DNA of 63,989 nucleotides, counting the filler, from Neoconidiobolus thromboides FSU 785 (Eukaryota; Fungi; Entomophthoromycota): NCBI GenBank assembly GCA_025603075.1. It is 7 parts of 7 records of this genome, joined end to end, with 100 filler letters (N's around TTAATTAATTAA, not from the genome) between each part and the next. Parts side by side here need not be neighbours in the genome. Positions count along the whole stretch, not along the records: positions 1 to 11,043 come from MU626643.1; 6 more parts are not named here. One strand, 5' to 3'. The position numbers and the translations under genes are program-made. Of the stretch, positions 1 to 11,043 are shown one piece after another. The notes beneath the pieces are model-generated. The model was not told the DNA's origin. It saw nothing but the letters and a program-made list of their open reading frames with translations, and did no database searches. Every line of letters begins with the position of its first letter. Position 1 is the first letter of the stretch.

Positions 1-1179
1 ACTGTGTTTATATAATTATGTATTTATATAATTATATAATCATATAGTTATATATTATATATCTGTTAAATATCTAACAGAACTAACATAAAATATATAG
101 TTAGGAAAATTAGCTATTTAGGAAAAGGAAACAATTAAAATAAGTTTTAAATAGAGACATTTAATTTTAGGCTTTTTAGATTTAACCGTTATATTGGACA
201 CAAACTTGAAATTTTAAATTTGGATTAATTTCTAAGTAGATTCTGAAACCAATTAGGACAGCCCCATATCTTTTCTTTGTTTTGTTTTATTATAAAATTC
301 CATAAACCTTGGGTTGTTATAAGTAGCTCTTAAAATTGATGTAAATGAATTACAATGTTTATATTGTGTACTCCTCCCTATTGTATTGAAATTTTCAAAA
401 ATTCCATTTCGAAGTCTAGTTATGAAAGTTTGCATTTTATTTTTATTTCAAAAAAAAATAAAGTCAAATAACTGGATTTATATAATTATATAACCATTGT
501 GAAATATCGCTTTGTCAGTCCCATGGTTAGTTATAGCATAACAATCCCCTAAGCTGTCGTGTTCTCGAGTTTAGAGAAAATCAGCCCCACGTTCTTATTT
601 TGATTTGCTATGAGAATTTCTAGCTCCATCCCAAAGAATATTATCTCCTCATTTTGATATTTATACTTTTCAGAGTATAAAAGAGTTTACAGAGTATAGT
701 AGTTCGAAGCTTTTTAACTGAGTTATTCCCTGATATCTCGAACATTTAATAAAGCCACTAAGTTTACTTAATAGTATTTTATATAGATTTTACATTAGTA
801 TTGTCTATTCTATTTGTCTTATATAGCTTGTAACTTATTACGTGCTATTCCTCATAATCCAAGTCTATCTTAGTCACATAAACTAAGACCTTTCGACTTA
901 TAGTGTAGTAAACCCAGCAATAGCTGCTCTTGACTCCAAACCCAGAGTACTAGATTTCACACCATATAGTTATATATTATATATCTACTAAATATCTAAC
1001 ATAAAGAACATAAAATATATAATTAGGAAAATTAGCTATTAAAAAAAAGGAAACAATTAAAATAAGTTTTGAATAAAGAGATTTAATTTAGGCTTTTCAG
1101 ATTTAACCATCACATTAGACACAAATTTAAGAATTGGATTAACTTCTGGGTAAATTCTGAAACCAATTCGGACAACCCC
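1..1179 (-). mobile_element. Nested non-autonomous repeat family B, with GGGG(T/C)TGTCC.AATTGGTTTCAG termini at 265 and 1179
   Basis: About 40-269 and 960-1183 are direct repeats ending in GAAACCAATT.GGACA.CCCC-ATAT. About 100-470 is the reverse complement of 37543-37925, and about 480-900 is the reverse complement of 52150-52580. No transposase ORF. Confidence 0.75.
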
Positions 1180-1229
1180 ATATACTCGTAAATATTTCAA
1201 ATAGTATTATATTAATATTAAGTAAATAA

Positions 1230-1760
1230 ATTATAGCTAACAATAGAAGCACAGAAGTACCAATTCAGTAGCCAACTTCAATCTTTTAGCTATATTGGTA
1301 TTATGTATAAATAGGGATGTTTTTTGGCTTCATTACTTTTTCTATGTTTTAAGCGCTATTTGAGTGGAAAAATCATTAGTGAAATTCTTAAACACAAAAA
1401 TATATCCTTAAATACTAACTGTAAATTAATTCCAATACCAGCTTTGAAGAAACTATAGTATAAGGGAAAGAATAACAGTTGAGGACTGATAAAAACAAAC
1501 AATAGAGATTCTTTATAATTTTAAGTTTGATTCCACAGTGGTAAGAAATTTGACTGAATATCATACACCATAATACCAGTTTATAAGCATAGGGTTATCC
1601 TATCTACTAAATTTTCATTGAACTGTTATGTTGACGATTTAATATAGTAGAGCTTACTCAATATAACTATTGTAAGTACAACTATGACTGCTAACATCAA
1701 CAATACTTTGCGCACCGCTGAATAAACCGCTTTACTTATATTACTTTGAATATTTAATAA
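1230..1760 (-). pseudogene. GPCR-like 7TM family pseudogene interrupted by a MITE
   Basis: Reverse complement aligns by eye to 10640-11043 (LVDR.TL, FFPLYYSF..AGIGINLQLVF.HN, GYWIG). The Trp codon is TGA (1265-1267), frameshifts are present, and a MITE sits at 1313-1409. Confidence 0.7.
1313..1409 (+). mobile_element. MITE family A copy (97 bp) with AAAT target-site duplication
   Basis: AAAT(1309-1312)-AGGGATGT...ATATCCTT-AAAT(1410-1413). Removing the element and one TSD restores the GINLQLVFIHN codons on the minus strand. Confidence 0.9.
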
Positions 1761-3384
1761 CACCCAATTTGACTAAAAAATCAATTTCATCACAAATAGT
1801 AGTTTTTCGTCGTATTTGTACAATTTTTGTTCTCATCATTCTAGTTCTTTAGTTTGATTTTCAACTATAGTCTAAAAATAATAGGACCTATTCAACTAAA
1901 CCATGAAATTCACTTTTTTCTTAAGCTGATTACTTTTTAAGATTGATTTAAACAATATAATAACTATACTAATTTATTATTTTCAGTTTTAATGGATTCA
2001 TTGGATGATAGTAGATTCACAACTTTTAACAGTTTATACCACTGATTATAACGATATAAGATTTTGAAAGATTAATATATGCCATATTATCACTATGATA
2101 TTTTGATTAAATAATATATACATAAAGTAAGTATAAGGGAATGGATTTCAATTTTAATATCTTATTTACATTTCAATAATTTCAATAATTAAATTATTAA
2201 ACTGTACATATTGCTTAATAATTTAACTTGGTTTAAACTTTATTTTTAAAAAATTTAAAACAAGTTGATCATTCCATCTGTATTTATAATTTGTTCAACA
2301 CAAAATTGTTTTTCAACAATAAAAAAATAAATATAAAACAAAAAAAGTGAATTTTTTACTAAAAAAACACAAAAGAGTAGACTCCTTAAGCGTATATTAT
2401 CAAGGATAAAAAACATACCAGAAGTAAACTAACTGATCAAAATAACGATAAAGGTAAGGAGGAAGAAGTGGTAGAAAATTTCACTTGACATTTAACAGCT
2501 TTAATTCTAAAAGTCTATAATTGATGGCTTAGAAATACATTTTAGTTAAAGTAAAATAGATGTTCAAAAGGCCAAAGGAGGTAGTAGATATAGCGATTTG
2601 CTTATTAGCTGATAAATTTTTGTAAATAAAGTGAACAAGTCATACCCTAATATTTATAATAAAAGTTTGAGACCAAGGGAATAAAATGGTAAAGACAAAC
2701 TATATATTTATAGATATGGTTTCTCATGTCATTATAAAACAATTTTTTAGTACAATCATTGAAACTGATTTATTATAAGTATAGAAATAATTAGAACTAT
2801 AAAAAACAAGTTAATTTTAGTAACTTACATTGTTCATGTGAGATGCTAGAAAAACAATGATATTTTATTTTGCTAGGAAATAGTTAGTGAATGATAAAGC
2901 ATTAAATCGATCATTTGAATAATATGAGGCAACGAAAGGGAGGATTTTAGTTTTAAATTTAAAAGGATTCAATTGATTATTTTATTTTATTTAGTTTCAT
3001 TTATTTAAGATATAATAAAAAAATAAATGGTTTGAATTAAAATAAGATATTATAAAACTCTCAATAGATAATATAAAATAGAAAGTATACCTAATCCAAA
3101 AAGGATAGACTGTAATTATGAGATTTCGCTTTAGATTTTAATAACTAATAATACGAAGGTCATGGGCTTTACTAAAGTAGCAACGACATTTAAGTGAATG
3201 ACTATCACTTGATAACTTTTATTACAAATATACTAAATCACAATAGAATTTAAAATATAAATTTATCACAAAATTCCTATCCTTAGTATTCGAATAAAAA
3301 AAGAAAATAAAGCATAGATAAAAAAAGGATAAATAGAAAAGAATTTCAAAAAACTATGTAAATTTTTTTTGCTATAAAGAAAAA

Positions 3385-5168
3385 ATGAATTCTTTAATTT
3401 CAATTTTACTTTTGTCTTTAAACATCAATACCATTTTGTAAGTTTTCTCATATAACTTCCTAACCACCATATACTAACCCTCATCTTTTTCATTAGCTCT
3501 TCTGGTATTCATCATGTAAGACTCCATCAAGAAGGTGATCGCTCTAAAGCTTGTCTCATTATCTCTGAAAGCGAGAACGTCACTTATAAAGACTTAAACT
3601 CCAATGATGTTAATGCTCTTTCTATCCTTAGTAAGCCAGCAATCTCTTCCGCCAACGATAATTTAACTAAAGAATCTGTAAATTCCAATATCATTGAGCT
3701 CTATTCTTATAGTAAATCCATTATTGATGCTCATATTCAATCCATATGTAGTAAAGTAGAAAATTTGAAACCATTATCTTCCTCGGCTAAGAATAGCAAC
3801 GATGATGTCGCTATTAATGCTCCCGATGTACGTAAAATTGTAGATAATGGAGACGCAGCTAATCGTATTGATGTTGTATTTATGGGAGATGGTTATACGG
3901 CTTCAGAGAAAACCAAGTTCTTTTCTGATATTTCGAGATTAACTACAGATATGTTTGAGGGTCCTACTTTTAAATCATGGTTACCCCTATTTAATATTTG
4001 GGCTATTCATGTGGAGTCTGTTGATTCTGGTATCGGTTACAATGGTGCTAAAAACACACCATTTAAATTATATCGTGAAGCTGGTCAATTGAGAGCTATA
4101 TTTACTGGAAATTCTAACTATGCTCGTCAGATTTGCCAGTTGACTGGTAGTAATGCTTGTGATTATCCAAGCTTAATTGCTAATGACGATTATTATGGAG
4201 GTTTAGGCGGAGAATTCGTAATTTCTACTAAATCAGCAAGAACCGGTACCGTTGTGTTACGTCATGAAATGGGTCATAATTTTGTATCTGTTGGTGAAGA
4301 ATATGATAATGGGCAGGTTTATTCAGGTGTTAATGCAGCTACTTCAATTAATACTGGATGGAAAAATTGGATATCTGGACCTGTAAGAGAAGAAAAAGCC
4401 ATTTATAGATTATTGGAATATCCTTGGCATAATCTTGCTAATGGCCAAAAATCTTTTACTTTTACATCTGATGGTAAATTTAAAAGATGGTATTTATTGA
4501 CTTCGGTTACTGCTGCTGGTGAAGCTAATTCTTTAGAATTTGTTCTTGATGGTAAAGTACTACCTTGGCAAGCAAGAGGTAGTGATGATCGTGAATTCTA
4601 CGACTGGCGTGGAGAACAAGGATTTACAGCTGGCACTCATACTTTGACTGTAAGATCTAAGACAGCTTCAACAAATCAAGATATACCACGTATGATTGCT
4701 TCAGTTACATTACATGAGTTTGGAGATGAAAATGAATTTAAAATAGCTAATGATAATTACTCCGCTTACCCTACTTGGGATGTTAATCGTAGAAAAACAT
4801 ATCGTCCAACCAACGCAGGTTGTTTAATGAGAAACATGACTCATAATTCTTTCTGTAATGTTTGCAAAGAAGGTATGTGGTTCCAATTTTTAAAACGTAT
4901 TTCGTTGATTGATGGGGTGAAGGCAGATAAAACTAAAATTTCTTTATCTACTCTTAAAATTGGTCAATTCCGTACACCTACTCCTGTACCCGGTGAAAAA
5001 TTAAGCATTACTTGGACTTTAAATAATCAAGTTCAAACTCAATTTAAAGATCAATTAGAAATTTTAAATCCATCTTCTGGTTCTTGGTCTGTTACTGTGG
5101 AATTTATTAGTCCTGAAATTCGTACTGCTTCTACTCATACTAAAGATGTAAAATCTTTTACTGTCTAA
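3385..5168 (+). CDS. Secreted M64-family (IgA peptidase-like) zinc metallopeptidase, 2 exons
   Basis: HEMGH zincin motif followed by GEEY, N-terminal IDVVFMGDGY, C-terminal CLMR...FCNVC. ATG at 3385 gives signal peptide MNSLISILLLSLNINTIFS. Intron 3438-3496; exon 2 is open in frame into the tracked ORF at 3765. Confidence 0.85.
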
Positions 5169-5306
5169 ATAAAATAAACAAGCTCGATTATAAAAACTAT
5201 TCTCAACTTCTATTAAAGTATAAAAAATCATTTTAATTACGATCGTTTTTTATTTCTAACTAAATTAATCTATAATCTTAAAAAACGCAGTCCCATCCCC
5301 TACTAT

Positions 5307-5774
5307 CTATTCTTCCTTTTTTTTTCCAATTCCCTTTTGCTTCATATATTCTTCCATCTCTTTCCTATTATCAAACTTCATCACCATTTCATCATTACTT
5401 TTGGCAATAGTATCCAAATTCGATTTATAATCCTCAAACCAATTCAAATTATCTGCAATTAAATGTCGGTTATCACATCCAGTACACTGAATTAAGACTA
5501 CTCCTTGTGTGTATGCTACTTTAGAGATTTCATTACTATTATAGACATTACATACTTTACATTTAAAGGTTAAACTCAGTTTTGCTTCTTTAGTATTTGG
5601 AGAAGGTGGGGGAGGAGCATTGGTGGTGGGTAATTGTTCTTTTGGGCGATGGCTCGTGATGAAACTGCGAGAGTGTAAATTTATATTTTGAGTGTATGCG
5701 GTTTTACATATTTGCTTTTTGAATTCGGTTAATAAGGATAATTGTAAGCGTTGATATAGTCTTGTTGCTCGCAT
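5307..5774 (-). CDS. ZIM17: Mitochondrial DNL-type zinc-finger Hsp70 escort protein (Zim17/Hep1/Tim15)
   Basis: FKCKVC...ISKVAYTQGVVLIQCTGCDNRHLIADNLNWF; Arg-rich N-terminal presequence. Confidence 0.93.
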   Translation of the reverse strand: MRATRLYQRLQLSLLTEFKKQICKTAYTQNINLHSRSFITSHRPKEQLPTTNAPPPPSPNTKEAKLSLTFKCKVCNVYNSNEISKVAYTQGVVLIQCTGCDNRHLIADNLNWFEDYKSNLDTIAKSNDEMVMKFDNRKEMEEYMKQKGIGKKKEE

Positions 5775-5967
5775 ACTTTTTTCAAATAGAACAAAATTAG
5801 GATAAAAAATTCAGTTAATTCGGAGGCTTAGTCTTGGTGTAATAAACTGAAATAAAAATCAACCAATTAAATAGTATAGTTTATTGGCAAAATGAATTTC
5901 GTAATTTCAATAAAAAATATAATTCATTTAAAATCTTGTACTATTTTAAAGTTTATTAATTTTAGTT

Positions 5968-6977
5968 ATGGAGGAAGAAGGTAATTAAATAAAATTAAAT
6001 AAAATTAAATAATCAATTCGACTAATTTTACTTGTGTAAGATGGAATAAAGTTATATAATAATAGTAAAGAAAGAGGGGAGATATTAAATTTAGCCAATT
6101 TACATTCGATAATAATAGCTATGGAATTATTAGAAAAAGGCTATTCTTCTGGTATTATTGAACCTGAAGAGTAAGTATCAATATATCCCCATTAATTCAC
6201 CAACCCATCAAATATATTCAGTTAACAAAATATTCAATTACTTTATAGGTATACGGAAGAGTGCAATTTGTTAATAGCTCAATATAAAGTGGCTTTAACT
6301 TCAGTTAGTAAAAAGATGCCAAACTTGGACACATTTCTAAAAACTTATCAGGTAAGGATAGGATTTGTTTTAGGATTGAGGATGTTGTAGTTTATGGTTT
6401 TATTATTAATTTAGTTTGAAGCTCCCTTAGCTAAATTTCGATTTCAAGAAGGTTACCCAGCGACGCTGCTATTAGCTAAAAATGAAAATAATAATTCTGT
6501 TGTTAAGAAAACGCTATTTGCTGGCGAGGTAAGTTAATCATAATATAATATTACTCCTTAATGTTAATAATACATAAAATAATTGGTTTTATTAATCTTA
6601 TAATTGTAGAAATTTATTACAGTTATCGATTCTTTAGAGTTGGGTTATAATCAACCAAGTCAATTATTTCCTGAACTATCAGCCTTAGCACAAACGATCA
6701 ATTCGTTAGCTTTAGAGTCTAACGGTATTCAAAATTTTGATGGAAAAGATAAAATATTTGATTGGTAAGATATTTAATGTTATTAATAATACTATAAATA
6801 GGATAATAATGATAACACATATTATTATCTTATATGCCCTATATTAATTTGGATTATTTTAGGTTGAGAGTTATAAATTCCATGAAAGCCAATCAAGAAT
6901 TAACTGAAGATGAAATTCATAATTTTAAATTTGATATTGATAAAGCTTACATTGGATTTAAAGATGCCTTACCTTAA
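5968..6977 (+). CDS. VPS28: ESCRT-I subunit Vps28, multi-exon
   Basis: Spliced translation IKLYNNSKERGEILNLANLHSIIIAMELLEKGY...EEYTEECNLLIAQYK...FITVIDSLELGY...KFDIDKAY; several GT-AG introns. Not in the ORF track. Confidence 0.85.
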
Positions 6978-7095
6978 TGATTGTTATAATAATATAAAAC
7001 TCAAAGTAAAAAATGTATATATTTGTAAATAATTTATAGATAATTTATTAACTTTATAGAATATATTTATTTTATATAATTTACTTATATATAAT

Positions 7096-8847
7096 TTATT
7101 GTTCTATAGTATTATCATTATTATTGCCATTTATCTTATTAATAGTAATAGGCTTCATTAATATATCTGCATTTAATGCCTCATGAATATGATTAACTAC
7201 TTGGTTAATATTAACTCTAATTTGTTTTTGAGTATCTCTAAAACGAATAGTCACCGTTTCATCTTCTAATGTTTGATAATCAATAGTAATACAATAAGGA
7301 GTGCCAATTTCATCCATACGATAGTATTTTTTACCAATTTTTAATTGTTGATTTAATAATCTAGTTGAGATATTTCTAATTAAAAATTGACTATTTAATT
7401 GTTCTGCTATATTATTGAATTCTTCTTTGTTGATTAAGGGACATATTCCCACCTTGATGGGTGCTATTTTGGGGTTTAATTTCAATATAATACGATCTTG
7501 TTGGATGGTGAATGCATCTAATAGTATAGCTAAACATGCTCGATTTAATCCAGAAGAGGATTCGATTACATAAGGTATTACTTGATTGTCATTTTCATTA
7601 TTCTCATTATTATTTACTAACTCATTATTACTACTTTTATTACTATTATTATTGATATTTTCATTATCTGTAATTCTAAAATTTCTACCACTAGCATTCA
7701 TATGGGATTTCAAATCAAAGTCGCCTCTATTAGCAATACCTTCTAACTCGCCCCAGCCCCAAGGAAACATGAACTCCACATCTGTACAAGCCTTTGCATA
7801 ATGAGCTAGTTCTTTATCTTCATGATTTCTTTTACGAAATAACTCTTTATTGTTAACTAACTCAAACCACCAATCCATTCTTTTTTGGACATAAACATCA
7901 AACCATTCATTAGCTTTCTTAGGTAAAGTAAAAAATTGTAACTCCATTTGTTCAAATTCTAAAGTTCTAAAGATCATATGTTCTACTCTTAATTCATTTC
8001 GGAAACTTTTACCTAATTGAGCTACACCAAAAGGTATTTTATTACCTGCAAATCTCAAACAATAAAGGTAATTGATAAATACGCCTTGTGCCGTTTCTGG
8101 GCGTAGATAAACGACAGAGGTATTATTGATCTGCTCTAATGTTTCTTTTGGGTTTGGAGATTCTATTAATCGTTGTAAAGGATCTATAGGATCCAAAAAT
8201 GTTTTAAACATACAATTAAACTTTCGGCTTTCTGTCAAAAAAGGAGAATTGATTTTAGATACATAACCATTATATGGATACTCTATAACTTCTTCTTTAT
8301 TATTTAAAAATTCAATCCTACCTTTATAATCATTACTATCTTCTGGTTTTATTACTTGTTTAATAAATAATTTGATTTGTTTATTTTTAATTTGATATTT
8401 AATCCCTTTTAACCCAATATTGCTTTCAATAATCTTTAAAAAGCCCTCTACGTCATTTTCATTCTCCGCAATAACTTTAATATACTTTTCTCCTTCCTTA
8501 TCCCCGCTAATCCTTAATTCCCCTGCCTTATCTGGTCTGAATCTCTCCTTTGATAATATATCATCTACCAACTCATCCGTAAAATTCTTCAAATGTCCTG
8601 ATGCTGAAAATACTTGAGAGCTATTTAATATACTAGTATCTAAGCCCATGACCTGGGGATCTGTAGTTACCATCCGATACCACCAATGCGAACTGATGTT
8701 TTTTTTTAACTCTAAACCTAGAGGACCATAGTCATACCCTCCTCGTAAACCGCCATAGATCTCACTGCTTGGGAATAAGTAGCCACTACGCTTGCACAGT
8801 TCGATCAGTTTGACCATTACGTTTTTTGGGTATTTGATAGGTTTCAT
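7096..8847 (-). CDS. glyQS: Glycyl-tRNA synthetase, homodimeric alpha2 type with bacterial-like motifs, intronless
   Basis: SEIYGGLRGGYDYGPLG, YLRPETAQG, GKSFRNE, FEQMELQFF, LAHYAKACTDVEFMFPWGWGELEGIANRGDFDL, and an anticodon-binding domain DEIGTPYCITID. Confidence 0.9.
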   Translation of the reverse strand: MKPIKYPKNVMVKLIELCKRSGYLFPSSEIYGGLRGGYDYGPLGLELKKNISSHWWYRMVTTDPQVMGLDTSILNSSQVFSASGHLKNFTDELVDDILSKERFRPDKAGELRISGDKEGEKYIKVIAENENDVEGFLKIIESNIGLKGIKYQIKNKQIKLFIKQVIKPEDSNDYKGRIEFLNNKEEVIEYPYNGYVSKINSPFLTESRKFNCMFKTFLDPIDPLQRLIESPNPKETLEQINNTSVVYLRPETAQGVFINYLYCLRFAGNKIPFGVAQLGKSFRNELRVEHMIFRTLEFEQMELQFFTLPKKANEWFDVYVQKRMDWWFELVNNKELFRKRNHEDKELAHYAKACTDVEFMFPWGWGELEGIANRGDFDLKSHMNASGRNFRITDNENINNNSNKSSNNELVNNNENNENDNQVIPYVIESSSGLNRACLAILLDAFTIQQDRIILKLNPKIAPIKVGICPLINKEEFNNIAEQLNSQFLIRNISTRLLNQQLKIGKKYYRMDEIGTPYCITIDYQTLEDETVTIRFRDTQKQIRVNINQVVNHIHEALNADILMKPITINKINGNNNDNTIEQ

Positions 8848-9159
8848 GGTTATGATTGAGGATTATATATAACTATGTTATTTTTTGAGATTTTGAGTTT
8901 TCTGTTAAGATAAAAACTCTGGATTTCAATTTTTCAAGAAATTTGGGATTTTGAAATTAAATTTTTTCGACTTAAAATCTGGGCATATAGGTGTTTCATT
9001 TTTTTAAATCTTGATAAGAAATTTCATTCACTACTACTCTGCTATGGTTTGAACATAAATTTGAGATTTTTGTTTTTGTTTGACATATACATAAATAATC
9101 TCAAAACCAAAATCTAATCTTTTATATTTTTACTAATTAATTAAGAAACAATAGAAAAC

Positions 9160-10090
9160 AATGTCCATCAAATCTTATCACGATTATGTTACAGAAGTGG
9201 CTTATCAGTAATATCAAAATCTTCTTTAGTATTAACGATAGTAGTTATATTAACAGTGGTAATATTAAGTAATTTATTGCATACTACCACTTTATCATTG
9301 TCGAATATTAACTCTCAAAATATAGTTATTTATAATCGAAAACTAGTAGATAGAATTCACCTTATAATTATAAACTGGTATCTCATGCTATGATATATGG
9401 TTCCATTGACTACTTTTATGGAATCGACTCTATAGTTATGAAGGATCTCTGTCGTGTGCTTTTATTGTTTATTAATTATTTTCATTCCCGTTGTCTTATT
9501 GTTTTTTGAATACTGCTATTGGATTGAATTTATAATTGATATTTTTACATAATGTTAATGTGACAAAAAGAATGGAGGTAGCATATTAGTTAGGCGCTGT
9601 GAGATTGGCTTTATTAATTACATTACCCCCATTGAGTAAGTTTTGAGGTTTATAATGTTGAATTTTTATGGATTCGCTTATTATTTAGCTATCCAGGTAG
9701 TAGGTTATGGTGAGTTTAATAAATGTTATATAGTTAGTAACGATCTAAATTCGACTAAATTGATCCATTTTTTTACAAATTTAATAATAATATGTATATT
9801 TTACTTGGTCACTATAGTTGTATTACTTACTATTAAATTATATCGTTGTATGCGTTTAATTTATGATCAAGGAGAAAATGTTGACAATGGATTATCAAAA
9901 AAAGCAATGAAAAAAATTATATTGTTGATTTCTAGAATGTAGGTGTTGCTCATATAAATAGTCTATAGTTTGTAATATTGACACGTTTTTAATAGTTCTT
10001 TATATTCAATAGTTATGATTATCACTCATCCTGATTTAGTAATTAACCAAACAATATCTGAATTTATCGAAATTGATTCATTAGAGCTAG
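9160..10090 (+). pseudogene. GPCR-like 7TM family pseudogene
   Basis: Homologous by eye to 10612-11043. In-frame stops: TAA at 9533 replaces Gln and TAG at 9587 replaces Trp. Tracked ORF 9643-9942 is a residual transmembrane segment. Confidence 0.65.
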
Positions 10091-10094
10091 ATAT

Positions 10095-10174
10095 GAGGGT
10101 GTTTTTTTCATTTTTAAGTGCTATTTGAGCGGAAGAATTATTAGTCGAATTCTTAAACATAAAAACACATCCCC
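10095..10174 (+). mobile_element. MITE family A copy (80 bp, internal deletion)
   Basis: ATAT-GAGGGTGT...ACATCCCC-ATAT. Confidence 0.85.
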
Positions 10175-10196
10175 ATATCTTGCTTATTTAACAGGT

Positions 10197-10289
10197 GGAG
10201 ATGTTTTTTTTGGTTTCCTCACTTTTCCATTCTTAAAGCGCTATTTAAGTGGAAAAGTTGCTAGTAAAATTCTTAAAAAATACATCCTC
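10197..10289 (+). mobile_element. MITE family A copy
   Basis: Core AAGCGCTATTTAAGTGGAAAAG; right end ACATCCTC-ATAT; left end degenerate. Confidence 0.75.
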
Positions 10290-10611
10290 ATATTGAATCA
10301 AAAATGGGTTCAATTCAGACATAGTTCACATTTTATTGGTTTGTAATAGTATGAAAACTTTTATTAAAGTGCTAAGCTTAATTTATTCAAACTTGCAAAC
10401 AGGTTTTTCGAAAAAATAAACTTTAAATCAAACTGGTAAAGTGGAATTGAAAATGTTATATTAATATTGACCCAATGTCTATGTATTTTAAGATAGAACA
10501 TTATTTATAATATATTAGGAAATCGAAAATTCTAAGGGATAGAAAACAATGTACTTAAAATGGAATATAAATACGAGCATTTGATTCCAATAGAAATTGA
10601 TTTTTATTATA

Positions 10612-11043
10612 ATGAATCTCGAAGAATATAGTGAATATGTAAATAAAGTAGTTTATCCAACAATGTCAAAGGTATCTTTAGTATTGGCCATCATAGTAGT
10701 ACTTACAATGGTATTGTTAAGTAAGTACTAGAACTATCTATCAATTAATATAATATTCTAATTTAGCAATAGCAATATATGATTTTAAATTGGTTGATAG
10801 AGTAACTCTTAGGCTACAAACTGGTGTTATATTATATGATATTTGGTTGCATTCTTTACCACTATGGAATCGTCCATATAATAAAGATGGATCGCCTTTA
10901 TGTACATTTATTGCTTACCAACTACTGTTCTTTCCTTTATATTATAGCTTTCTCAATGCTGCTATTGGGATTAATTTACAATTAGTCTTTCTGCATAACA
11001 TTAGCGTAACATGGAAAGTAGAAGCAGGTTATTGGATTGGAAC
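10612..11043 (+). CDS. GPCR-like 7TM protein (cAMP-receptor/Git3-like), 5' part, truncated by gap
   Basis: ATG at 10612, hydrophobic TM1, one short intron, then KLVDRVTLRLQ...CTFIAYQLLFFPLYYSFLNAAIGINLQLVF...YWIG. Family assignment is inferred from motif and TM spacing. Confidence 0.6.

What the first reader, a model, noticed from the sequence alone, without database searches (positions are those of the whole stretch)
7096..8847. Intronless bacterial-type alpha2 GlyRS embedded in a fungal housekeeping block
Seen: the motifs FPSSEIYGGL, YDYGPLG.ELK.NI...WW, SGH..NF.D.LVD, LAHYAKACTDVEF.FPWGWGELEGIA.RGDFDL and a protein with no N-terminal WHEP extension. Established, from my recall of the families: these match the bacterial homodimeric glyQS clade rather than eukaryotic GARS/GRS1 (AHYA.DCWDAE...YGWIE.VGCADR). 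Seen: no introns, an Asn-rich insertion like those in neighbouring host genes, and a stop 118 bp from intron-containing VPS28 on the same contig, which argues against contamination. Inference: a bacterial gene transfer, possibly serving as mitochondrial GlyRS, although no clear presequence is visible.
Basis: partly seen in the sequence, partly recalled or inferred. Interest (0 to 1): 0.8.

Follow-up and report, generated by a model that had tools for sequence, protein, structure and literature searches.

The report
Ancient bacterial-type GlyRS in a fungus
The gene is a real, intact bacterial-style glycine-tRNA ligase, but it is an old gene shared by early-diverging fungi and the single-celled relatives of animals, not a recent bacterial import into this fungus, and it may be the ancestor of the animal mitochondrial DNA polymerase helper subunit POLG2.

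Summary
Window 7096-8847 (-) is an uninterrupted 583-codon ORF for a bacterial-type homodimeric (alpha2) GlyRS. All quoted motifs are present, there is no WHEP domain, and its stop lies 118 bp from the stop of spliced VPS28.

ML trees put the protein inside one well-supported opisthokont clade: Zoopagomycota, Mucoromycota, Blastocladiomycota, Fonticula, Capsaspora and Ichthyosporea. The branching order mirrors the species tree. The clade is sister to a bacterial group of Myxococcota, Acidobacteriota, Planctomycetota and Marinimicrobia. An AU test rejects joining it to eukaryote-type GARS.

So the bacterial origin is real but predates the fungal-animal split. The gene is a vertically inherited resident, already annotated as GlyRS in many fungi. 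Catalytic residues are intact, and variants in related strains are mostly synonymous.

A mitochondrial role is the best guess but is unproven. Holozoan orthologues carry presequence-like N-termini. Fungal ones, including this one, do not, and RNA contigs show no 5' exon.

One side lead: profiles of this clade, above all the holozoan members, score animal POLG2 higher than bacterial profiles do. That suggests POLG2 descends from this lineage rather than from an animal-specific transfer.

The parts
7096..8847 (-). Complete coding sequence of the bacterial-type alpha2 glycine--tRNA ligase: 583 codons, with the stop at 7096-7098
   Evidence: ORF; NF003211 at 493.8 bits; PDB matches; AF2 model with pLDDT 85.4 and pTM 0.80; Foldseek best hits are Mycobacterium and Thermus GlyRS
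8527..8826 (-). N-terminal part of the catalytic domain, aa 8-107: first helix, FPSSEIYGG, SGHLKNFTDELVD, ERFRPDKA
   Evidence: Aligned to Thermus residues 7-101; invariant columns in A1 and A2
8248..8526 (-). Insertion domain between motifs 1 and 2, aa 108-200. It is longer in the opisthokont clade than in the sister bacteria and is absent from, or different in, Thermus-type enzymes
   Evidence: Alignment A1 columns 100-250; confidently folded beta-rich module, pLDDT 84-95
7693..8124 (-). Class II catalytic core, aa 242-385: RPETAQG (249-255), FRNE (282-285), FEQME (298-302), PWGWGELEG
   Evidence: Pfam tRNA-synt_2b at 242-385; ungapped alignment to Thermus 182-285 places E251, R283 and E302 on Thermus E188, R220 and E239; these columns are invariant in A2
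7573..7692 (-). Asn-rich low-complexity loop, aa 386-425, occupying a variable loop before motif 3
   Evidence: Translation; pLDDT 56-59; variable length in A1; these are exactly the 40 codons missing from the deposited 314-aa gene model
7575..7694 (+). 120-nt GT-AG intron of a plus-strand transcript antisense to GlyRS, with splice sites AAG|GTATTA ... CTAG|C. Read on the minus strand it would be CT..AC
   Evidence: Joint 7572>7693 seen in RNA runs X2 and X7; sequence
7513..7572 (-). Motif 3 region, aa 426-445: YVIESSSGLNRA, with E429, S431, G433 and R436
   Evidence: Aligned to Thermus YVIEPSAGVDRG; E429, G433 and R436 are invariant in A2
7183..7455 (-). C-terminal anticodon-binding domain, aa 465-555
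   Evidence: Pfam HGTP_anticodon, 2.9e-19
7099..7161 (-). Low-confidence, Asn-rich C-terminal tail, aa 563-583
   Evidence: pLDDT below 50; not conserved in A1
8863..8865 (-). In-frame TAA five codons upstream of the ATG; it rules out a longer N-terminus
   Evidence: Sequence; script
8934..8999 (-). Upstream 21-codon ORF (MKHLYAQILSRKNLISKSQIS*) in another frame. It is not spliced to the main ORF in RNA contigs and is probably a uORF
   Evidence: Sequence; the X2 contig is colinear over 7693-9268 and no indels were reported
5968..6977 (+). Convergent neighbour VPS28, with RNA-supported GT-AG introns at about 6171-6248, 6352-6414, 6529-6609 and 6765-6862
   Evidence: Deposited model carries PF03997; joints
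7006..7059 (+). Plus-strand GT-AG intron downstream of the VPS28 stop. The same RNA contig then runs on into the GlyRS 3' half
   Evidence: Joint 7005>7060 and X2 record 2; splice sites

Best explanation
This is the host's own, vertically inherited copy of a bacterial-type homodimeric glycine--tRNA ligase. The gene entered the lineage once, before fungi and animals diverged. The donor was a bacterium related to today's Myxococcota, Acidobacteriota, Planctomycetota and Marinimicrobia enzymes. It has been kept in Holomycota (Fonticula, Blastocladiomycota, Zoopagomycota, Mucoromycota) and in unicellular Holozoa (Capsaspora, Ichthyosporea). No Dikarya or animal sequence appeared among the labelled hits. 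The enzyme has every residue needed to activate glycine and an intact anticodon-binding domain, so it should charge tRNA-Gly. By inference, it most likely supplies Gly-tRNA for mitochondrial translation while a canonical eukaryote-type GRS1 serves the cytosol. Shown here: identity, integrity, host residence, clade membership and ancient vertical descent (about 0.9). Inferred: the mitochondrial role (about 0.55), because the fungal proteins lack a cleavable N-terminal presequence.
For: Family: NF003211 scores 493.8 bits against a cutoff of 312. Thermus scores 323 bits and human GARS 187. Foldseek ranks Mycobacterium and Thermus GlyRS first. Catalytic residues: E251, R283, E302, E429 and R436 align with Thermus E188, R220, E239, E359 and motif 3, and are invariant across 27 clade members. 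Phylogeny: IQ-TREE with LG+C20 PMSF recovers the opisthokont clade at 100/98, and at 99/94 with 31 sister bacteria added. Clade plus bacterial sister group is supported at 100/100. The inner order is Ichthyosporea, Capsaspora, the Fonticula group, Blastocladiomycota, then Zoopagomycota plus Mucoromycota. The window protein is sister to Conidiobolus coronatus at 99/97. The AU test rejects grouping with eukaryote-type GARS. Residence: an independent DNA contig spans 5200-9700, GC3 matches the host, and the Rhizopus orthologue is also intronless within a fungal gene neighbourhood. Selection: 10 of 12 listed variants in related strains are synonymous in this frame. Mitochondrial hint: Creolimax (66 aa, Arg-rich), Capsaspora (90 aa) and P0122 (31 aa) carry presequence-like N-terminal extensions. 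The literature reports a bacterial alpha2-type mitochondrial GlyRS in the jakobid Andalucia (PMC8754408) and a single dual-targeted GlyRS gene in Dikarya (PMC7049704).
Against: No Holomycota member has a usable N-terminal extension: they have 1-25 residues before the first conserved helix, and the window protein has 13. The window ORF has an in-frame stop five codons upstream. C. coronatus and Rhizopus have only 11 and 17 open codons upstream. RNA contigs show no 5' exon. Localisation was not and could not be tested. I could not check whether this genome, or other early-diverging fungi, also encode canonical GRS1. RNA contigs carry no strand information, and the only splice inside the ORF belongs to the opposite strand, so sense transcription is inferred from conservation rather than shown. 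Five clade members are unlabelled metagenomic or transcriptomic sequences. Holozoan branches are long (Capsaspora 1.5-1.6), so the position of the root inside the clade is unsure.
Confidence: 0.75

Rival explanations
1. Recent or lineage-specific horizontal transfer of a bacterial glyQS gene into this fungus or its close relatives.
For: The gene is bacterial in type and intronless. Bacterial homologues reach 38-41% identity.
Against: Fungal orthologues are closer, at 42-55% identity. The tree follows the species phylogeny across two opisthokont branches with strong support. Base composition is fully host-like, and an Asn-rich host-style loop has evolved within the gene.
Confidence: 0.03
2. Bacterial contamination or a chimeric assembly.
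For: None beyond the bacterial type of the protein.
Against: One contig of an independent DNA run, with 28 differences, spans zf-DNL, VPS28, GlyRS and the upstream region. GC is 0.31 in a 0.28 GC contig. The flanking genes carry spliceosomal introns.
Confidence: 0.01
3. The fungal enzyme is not mitochondrial. It would be a second cytosolic or dual-localised GlyRS, or serve a non-translational role, having lost the presequence that holozoan orthologues keep.
For: All roughly 90 fungal models and this RNA-checked locus lack an N-terminal extension. The N-terminus resembles that of the bacterial enzymes.
Against: Holozoan orthologues look organellar. The labelled hits show the gene only in lineages outside Dikarya, and Dikarya are known to dual-target GRS1 (PMC7049704). 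Keeping a fully redundant cytosolic enzyme for over a billion years would be unusual. Many matrix proteins import without cleavable signals (background knowledge).
Confidence: 0.2
4. The protein acts as a POLG2-like accessory factor of mitochondrial DNA polymerase gamma rather than as a synthetase.
For: POLG2 is a homologue and scores best against this clade's profiles.
Against: All aminoacylation residues are invariant in the clade. That is what an active synthetase predicts, and it argues against a factor that has given up aminoacylation. Fungal Pol gamma is known to work as a single subunit (background knowledge).
Confidence: 0.03

Closest known systems
Bacterial homodimeric (alpha2) GlyRS, glyQS type (NCBIfam NF003211; Thermus thermophilus 1ATI, Mycobacterium 8U2Q)
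   Same: Same domain order, the same class II motifs and glycine-pocket glutamates, the same anticodon-binding domain and the same fold.
   Different: It is encoded in a eukaryotic nucleus. It has a longer insertion domain (aa 108-200), an Asn-rich loop and an Asn-rich tail. Its nearest bacterial relatives are Myxococcota, Acidobacteriota, Planctomycetota and Marinimicrobia enzymes, not Thermus or Actinobacteria.
Annotated 'glycyl-tRNA synthetase' of Conidiobolus coronatus NRRL 28638 and other early-diverging fungi (P0007, P0001, P0003, P0023 and others)
   Same: They are orthologues at 45-55% identity with the same architecture and the same short N-terminus.
   Different: The deposited model for this genome is truncated to 314 aa and skips the Asn-rich loop. 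There is no conserved synteny with VPS28.
Eukaryotic GARS1/GRS1 (archaeal/eukaryotic-type alpha2 GlyRS)
   Same: Same reaction and a distantly related fold (187 bits; Foldseek ranks 12-25).
   Different: It is a separate clade, and the AU test rejects the union. The window protein has no WHEP domain, a different insertion pattern and different signature motifs.
Animal POLG2 (Pol gamma accessory subunit)
   Same: It is derived from a bacterial-type GlyRS and is mitochondrial. It scores highest with profiles of this opisthokont clade.
   Different: POLG2 serves as a processivity factor of Pol gamma rather than as a synthetase (background knowledge). The window protein keeps all the synthetase residues.
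Bacterial alpha2-type mitochondrial GlyRS of the jakobid Andalucia godoyi (PMC8754408)
   Same: A nuclear-encoded bacterial-type alpha2 GlyRS assigned to mitochondria.
   Different: Whether it belongs to the same clade was not tested. Other eukaryotic bacterial-type GlyRS (Amorphochlora, Cardiosporidium) fall in a different clade.

Membership tests
Bacterial-type homodimeric GlyRS (NF003211 / PRK04173) | Scores above the curated equivalog cutoff over the full length | tested here: met
   493.8 bits against a cutoff of 312, residues 12-553 on profile positions 2-453 of 454
Bacterial-type homodimeric GlyRS (NF003211 / PRK04173) | Class II motifs 2 and 3 and the acidic glycine pocket (Thermus E188, E239, E359; R220) | tested here: met
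   E251, E302, E429 and R283 align to these positions and are invariant in the clade
Bacterial-type homodimeric GlyRS (NF003211 / PRK04173) | C-terminal HGTP anticodon-binding domain | tested here: met
   PF03129 at 2.9e-19, residues 465-555
Bacterial-type homodimeric GlyRS (NF003211 / PRK04173) | Branches with bacterial alpha2 enzymes, not with archaeal or eukaryotic ones | tested here: met
   AU p 0.0012 against union with eukaryote-type GARS
Bacterial-type homodimeric GlyRS (NF003211 / PRK04173) | Glycylation of tRNA-Gly and a homodimeric state | not testable with these tools
   Needs recombinant enzyme
Eukaryotic GARS1/GRS1 | Membership of the eukaryote-type clade (TIGR00389 as best model, WHEP domain in many members) | tested here: not met
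   TIGR00389 scores lower (410) and in three pieces; no WHEP; separate clade
Nuclear-encoded mitochondrial aaRS | N-terminal mitochondrial presequence | tested here: not met
   13 residues before the first conserved helix, an in-frame stop 5 codons upstream and no 5' exon in RNA contigs. Holozoan orthologues do have extensions
Nuclear-encoded mitochondrial aaRS | Mitochondrial localisation, and a separate cytosolic enzyme in the same genome | not testable with these tools
   Only an 11-kb piece of the genome was available, and no search for GRS1 in the assembly was possible
POLG2 (Pol gamma accessory subunit) | Has given up the synthetase role, so aminoacylation residues are no longer conserved; partners with Pol gamma | tested here: not met
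   Catalytic residues are retained and invariant across the clade. Partnership with Pol gamma is not testable

The most novel reading that the evidence does not exclude
Animal POLG2 did not arise from an animal-specific transfer of a Thermus-Deinococcus GlyRS (Wolf and Koonin 2001). Instead it descends from this opisthokont-wide bacterial-type, ancestrally mitochondrial GlyRS, recruited to Pol gamma when eukaryote-type GARS1 took over mitochondrial glycylation. Support comes from the bit scores of human POLG2 against clade profiles, which fall in phylogenetic order: Holozoa 198.9, all opisthokonts 188.4, Holomycota 173.8, sister bacteria 154.1, other bacteria including the Thermus and Mycobacterium type 128.2, and an unrelated eukaryotic organellar clade 110.7. 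Bacterial GlyRS and human GARS show the opposite trend. A 2025 preprint still places the origin of Polg2 in Metazoa, with GARS1 as the nearest outside relative. No POLG2 sequence could be brought into a tree here.
Probability: 0.6. Interest if true: 0.65.

Novelty: new member of a known kind. Interest (0 to 1): 0.45.

Why it matters
For this genome, the result corrects a truncated public gene model and removes a supposed recent bacterial transfer. More broadly, it shows that a second, bacterial-type GlyRS is an ancestral opisthokont gene. It is kept in early-diverging fungi and in unicellular relatives of animals, and it did not appear among the labelled Dikarya or animal hits. That gives a clean system for asking how one dual-targeted synthetase replaced a dedicated organellar one. 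It also offers a simple vertical origin for POLG2, which is often cited as an animal-specific bacterial acquisition. I found no paper in the searchable library that describes this clade.

Tried and rejected
2. I looked for a 5' exon or presequence. The upstream ATG at 8999 opens a 21-codon ORF in another frame, and RNA contigs are colinear there, so it is treated as a uORF.
3. I first read the 120-nt skip over the Asn-rich loop as a possible GlyRS intron. I rejected this because it is GT-AG only on the plus strand.
4. I tried to show canonical GRS1 in early-diverging fungi. I obtained a eukaryote-type GlyRS query from a giant-virus contig. The top 120 hits were saturated with other eukaryotes, and the only fungi named were Rozella and yeasts, so this says nothing about Mucoromycota or Zoopagomycota. 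The Atlas search gave no useful taxon detail.
5. A search with the Amoebidium protein for animal or choanoflagellate orthologues returned mainly bacterial sequences.
6. POLG2 sequences could not be obtained through any tool, so no POLG2 tree was built.
7. The Chromosphaera 1473-aa protein was checked for a Pol gamma fusion. It is a Peptidase_M3 fusion, probably a merged gene model.
8. Synteny with VPS28 is not conserved in C. coronatus or Rhizopus.
9. A literature search for the assembly accession found nothing. The organism name is therefore not stated, only its tree position.
Full report
**Observation**

The piece (1-11043, 27.8% GC) carries one long ORF at 7096-8847 on the minus strand, 583 aa.
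- Pfam finds only the class II core and the HGTP anticodon-binding domain, with no WHEP domain.
- NCBIfam's equivalog for the bacterial-type homodimeric GlyRS (NF003211) scores 493.8 bits against a cutoff of 312 over the full length. The archaeal/eukaryotic model TIGR00389 scores 410 in three pieces.
- Among solved structures, the best sequence matches are Thermus (323 bits) and Mycobacterium alpha2 GlyRS. Human GARS scores 187 and POLG2 about 98.
- An AlphaFold2 model built on 27 relatives is confident (pLDDT 85.4, pTM 0.80). Foldseek ranks it in the same order: bacterial alpha2 GlyRS, then human and archaeal GlyRS, then POLG2.
- The ungapped alignment to Thermus places E251, R283, E302, E429 and R436 on Thermus E188, R220, E239, E359 and motif 3. 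These are the glycine pocket and ATP-binding residues described for that enzyme (Arnez et al. 1999, from my knowledge). The columns are invariant in 27 clade members.

The protein therefore looks like an active GlyRS.

**Genomic setting**

The source record is GCA_025603075.1, contig MU626643.1. Its neighbours are:
- VPS28 on the plus strand (deposited model 5968-6977, PF03997);
- a zf-DNL (Zim17/Hep1-type) gene at 5307-5774 on the minus strand;
- a Peptidase_M64 ORF.

Contigs of two RNA runs show four GT-AG introns in VPS28 and a fifth just after its stop. An independent DNA run (X3, 28 differences) has one contig covering 5200-9700. GC3 of the GlyRS ORF (0.24) matches the neighbours at 0.19-0.29.

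**Gene model**

The ORF needs no intron. It is colinear with homologues over 92-97% of its length, and the RNA contigs are colinear from 7693 to 9268.

One 120-nt skip (7575-7694) removes exactly the Asn-rich loop, residues 386-425. It is seen in two independent RNA studies. Its ends are AAG|GTATTA...CTAG|C on the plus strand and CT..AC on the minus strand. It therefore belongs to a plus-strand transcript antisense to GlyRS. That transcript is probably read-through from VPS28, because the VPS28 exons and 7060-7574 sit on one RNA contig.

The deposited protein for this locus (P0121, 314 aa) starts at M213 and omits these same 40 codons, so the public model is truncated.

Contigs carry no strand information, so sense transcription is not shown directly. 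However, 10 of 12 listed variants in related strains are synonymous in the GlyRS frame. One more is I>V, and one lies in the Asn-rich loop. That pattern indicates purifying selection on this frame.

**Relatives**

The best database matches are fungal, not bacterial, at 42-55% identity. They include:
- Conidiobolus, Entomophthora, Massospora and Basidiobolus;
- many Mucorales, Umbelopsis, Mortierellaceae, Jimgerdemannia and Calcarisporiella;
- Dimargaris, Dispira and Paraphysoderma.

Labelling cluster representatives added Catenaria, Fonticula alba, Capsaspora, Creolimax, Amoebidium and Chromosphaera. It also added unrelated eukaryotes, Amorphochlora and Cardiosporidium.

**Phylogeny**

A FastTree run on 177 rows and two careful IQ-TREE runs under LG+C20+F+G4 PMSF (77 and 85 rows) agree.
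- All opisthokont sequences form one clade, supported at 100/98, and at 99/94 after adding 31 members of the sister group.
- Its sister is a bacterial group containing Acidobacteriota, Planctomycetota (Uabimicrobium), Myxococcota, Bdellovibrionota and Marinimicrobia. The two together are supported at 100/100.
- Inside the clade the order is Ichthyosporea, Capsaspora plus Chromosphaera, the Fonticula group, Blastocladiomycota, then Zoopagomycota and Mucoromycota.
- The window protein is sister to Conidiobolus coronatus (99/97) within Entomophthoromycotina (100/100).
- Amorphochlora and Cardiosporidium fall elsewhere, so other eukaryotes acquired bacterial-type GlyRS separately.
- With nine eukaryote-type GARS added (obtained through a giant-virus locus), the clade stays apart. 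The AU test rejects a union with GARS (delta lnL 274.6, p 0.0012).

The gene is an ancient opisthokont resident of bacterial ancestry.

**Function and localisation**

Holozoan members with complete models have N-terminal extensions that look like presequences: Creolimax 66 aa and Arg-rich, Capsaspora 90 aa, P0122 31 aa. Every Holomycota member has only 1-25 residues before the first conserved helix. In the window an in-frame TAA lies five codons upstream of the ATG. C. coronatus and Rhizopus have 11 and 17 open codons upstream. A hidden N-terminus is therefore unlikely.

The 21-codon ORF at 8934-8999 is in another frame and is not spliced to the main ORF.

The literature supports an organellar reading in general:
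- Andalucia godoyi has a bacterial alpha2-type mitochondrial GlyRS that charges both A73 and U73 tRNA-Gly (PMC8754408).
- Dikarya use one dual-targeted GlyRS gene (PMC7049704).

I therefore rate a mitochondrial role as most likely, at about 0.55, and mark it as inference. I could not test whether this genome also has a canonical GRS1.

**POLG2 lead**

Animal POLG2 is held to derive from an animal-specific transfer of a Thermus-Deinococcus GlyRS (Wolf and Koonin 2001, cited in PMC4419789). A 2025 preprint states that Polg2 originated in Metazoa and that its nearest non-metazoan relatives are GARS1.

I built profiles of six groups and scored the PDB with each. Bit scores were as follows:

| Profile | Human POLG2 | Thermus GlyRS | Human GARS |
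|---|---|---|---|
| Holozoan members (5 sequences) | 198.9 | 456 | 252 |
| Whole opisthokont clade | 188.4 | 504 | 328 |
| Holomycota | 173.8 | 497 | 334 |
| Sister bacteria | 154.1 | 486 | 256 |
| Other bacteria | 128.2 | 610 | 382 |
| Unrelated eukaryotic organellar clade | 110.7 | 545 | 353 |

Thermus GlyRS and human GARS score highest with the 'other bacteria' profile, the one POLG2 likes second least. With the holozoan profile, POLG2 also aligns as a single 308-on-308-residue stretch.

This graded pattern is what descent of POLG2 from the holozoan branch of this clade predicts. It is a lead and not a tree, because no POLG2 sequence could be fetched.

**Verdict**

The gene itself is a new member of a known kind, already annotated as GlyRS in many fungal genomes. 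The clade-wide picture and its link to POLG2 appear undescribed in the searchable literature.

Noticed in passing
window 7575-7694 (+), 7006-7059 (+), 9269-9325 (+): Three GT-AG introns on the plus strand lie inside or beside the minus-strand GlyRS gene. RNA contigs join the VPS28 exons to the GlyRS 3' half, and the GlyRS 5' half to the next plus-strand gene. This suggests antisense read-through transcription across the whole GlyRS locus.
   Followed up: partly
window 7001-8211 (-); L001:2833-4043: The deposited gene model for this locus is a 314-aa fragment. It starts at M213 and removes the Asn-rich loop through a non-canonical CT..AC 'intron'.
   Followed up: yes
window 41-1741 (-) and 9210-10997 (+): Both ends of the piece hold diverged copies of a small multi-pass membrane-protein gene family. 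Direct repeats are spaced about 920 and 1452 nt apart. Inverted repeats 1403-1741 and 10637-10997 are 70% complementary. There is no Pfam match.
   Followed up: partly
window 3765-5168 (+): An uninterrupted ORF of at least 467 codons encodes a Peptidase_M64 (IgA-peptidase family) protein, a family better known from bacteria. It is annotated as 574 aa in the record.
   Followed up: no
window 8934-8999 (-): A 21-codon upstream ORF with a basic, hydroxyl-rich peptide (MKHLYAQILSRKNLISKSQIS) lies 86 nt before the GlyRS ATG, in another frame.
   Followed up: partly
P0160 (Chromosphaera perkinsii, 1473 aa): Here the bacterial-type GlyRS is fused to an N-terminal Peptidase_M3 domain. This is probably two merged gene models.
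   Followed up: partly
P0229 (Amorphochlora), P0176 (Cardiosporidium), P0149, P0151: A second, unrelated clade of bacterial-type alpha2 GlyRS occurs in eukaryotes with plastids. Its members have long N-terminal extensions and point to an independent acquisition.
   Followed up: partly
L099, L100, window 5307-5774: Orthologues often sit next to genes with mitochondrial functions: Suv3 helicase and a class Ib aaRS in C. coronatus, Som1 and an Fe-S assembly protein in Rhizopus, and zf-DNL here. This is anecdotal and not tested against chance.
   Followed up: no
L082:1471-3297: A 93-kb IMG/VR contig, probably a giant virus, encodes a full eukaryote-type GlyRS that scores 494 bits to human GARS.
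   Followed up: partly
L047, L044, L020: Genome bins labelled Acinetobacter pittii, Comamonadaceae and Bacteroidaceae carry GlyRS genes that branch within Bacteroidota or Bacillota. This is probably bin contamination.
   Followed up: no
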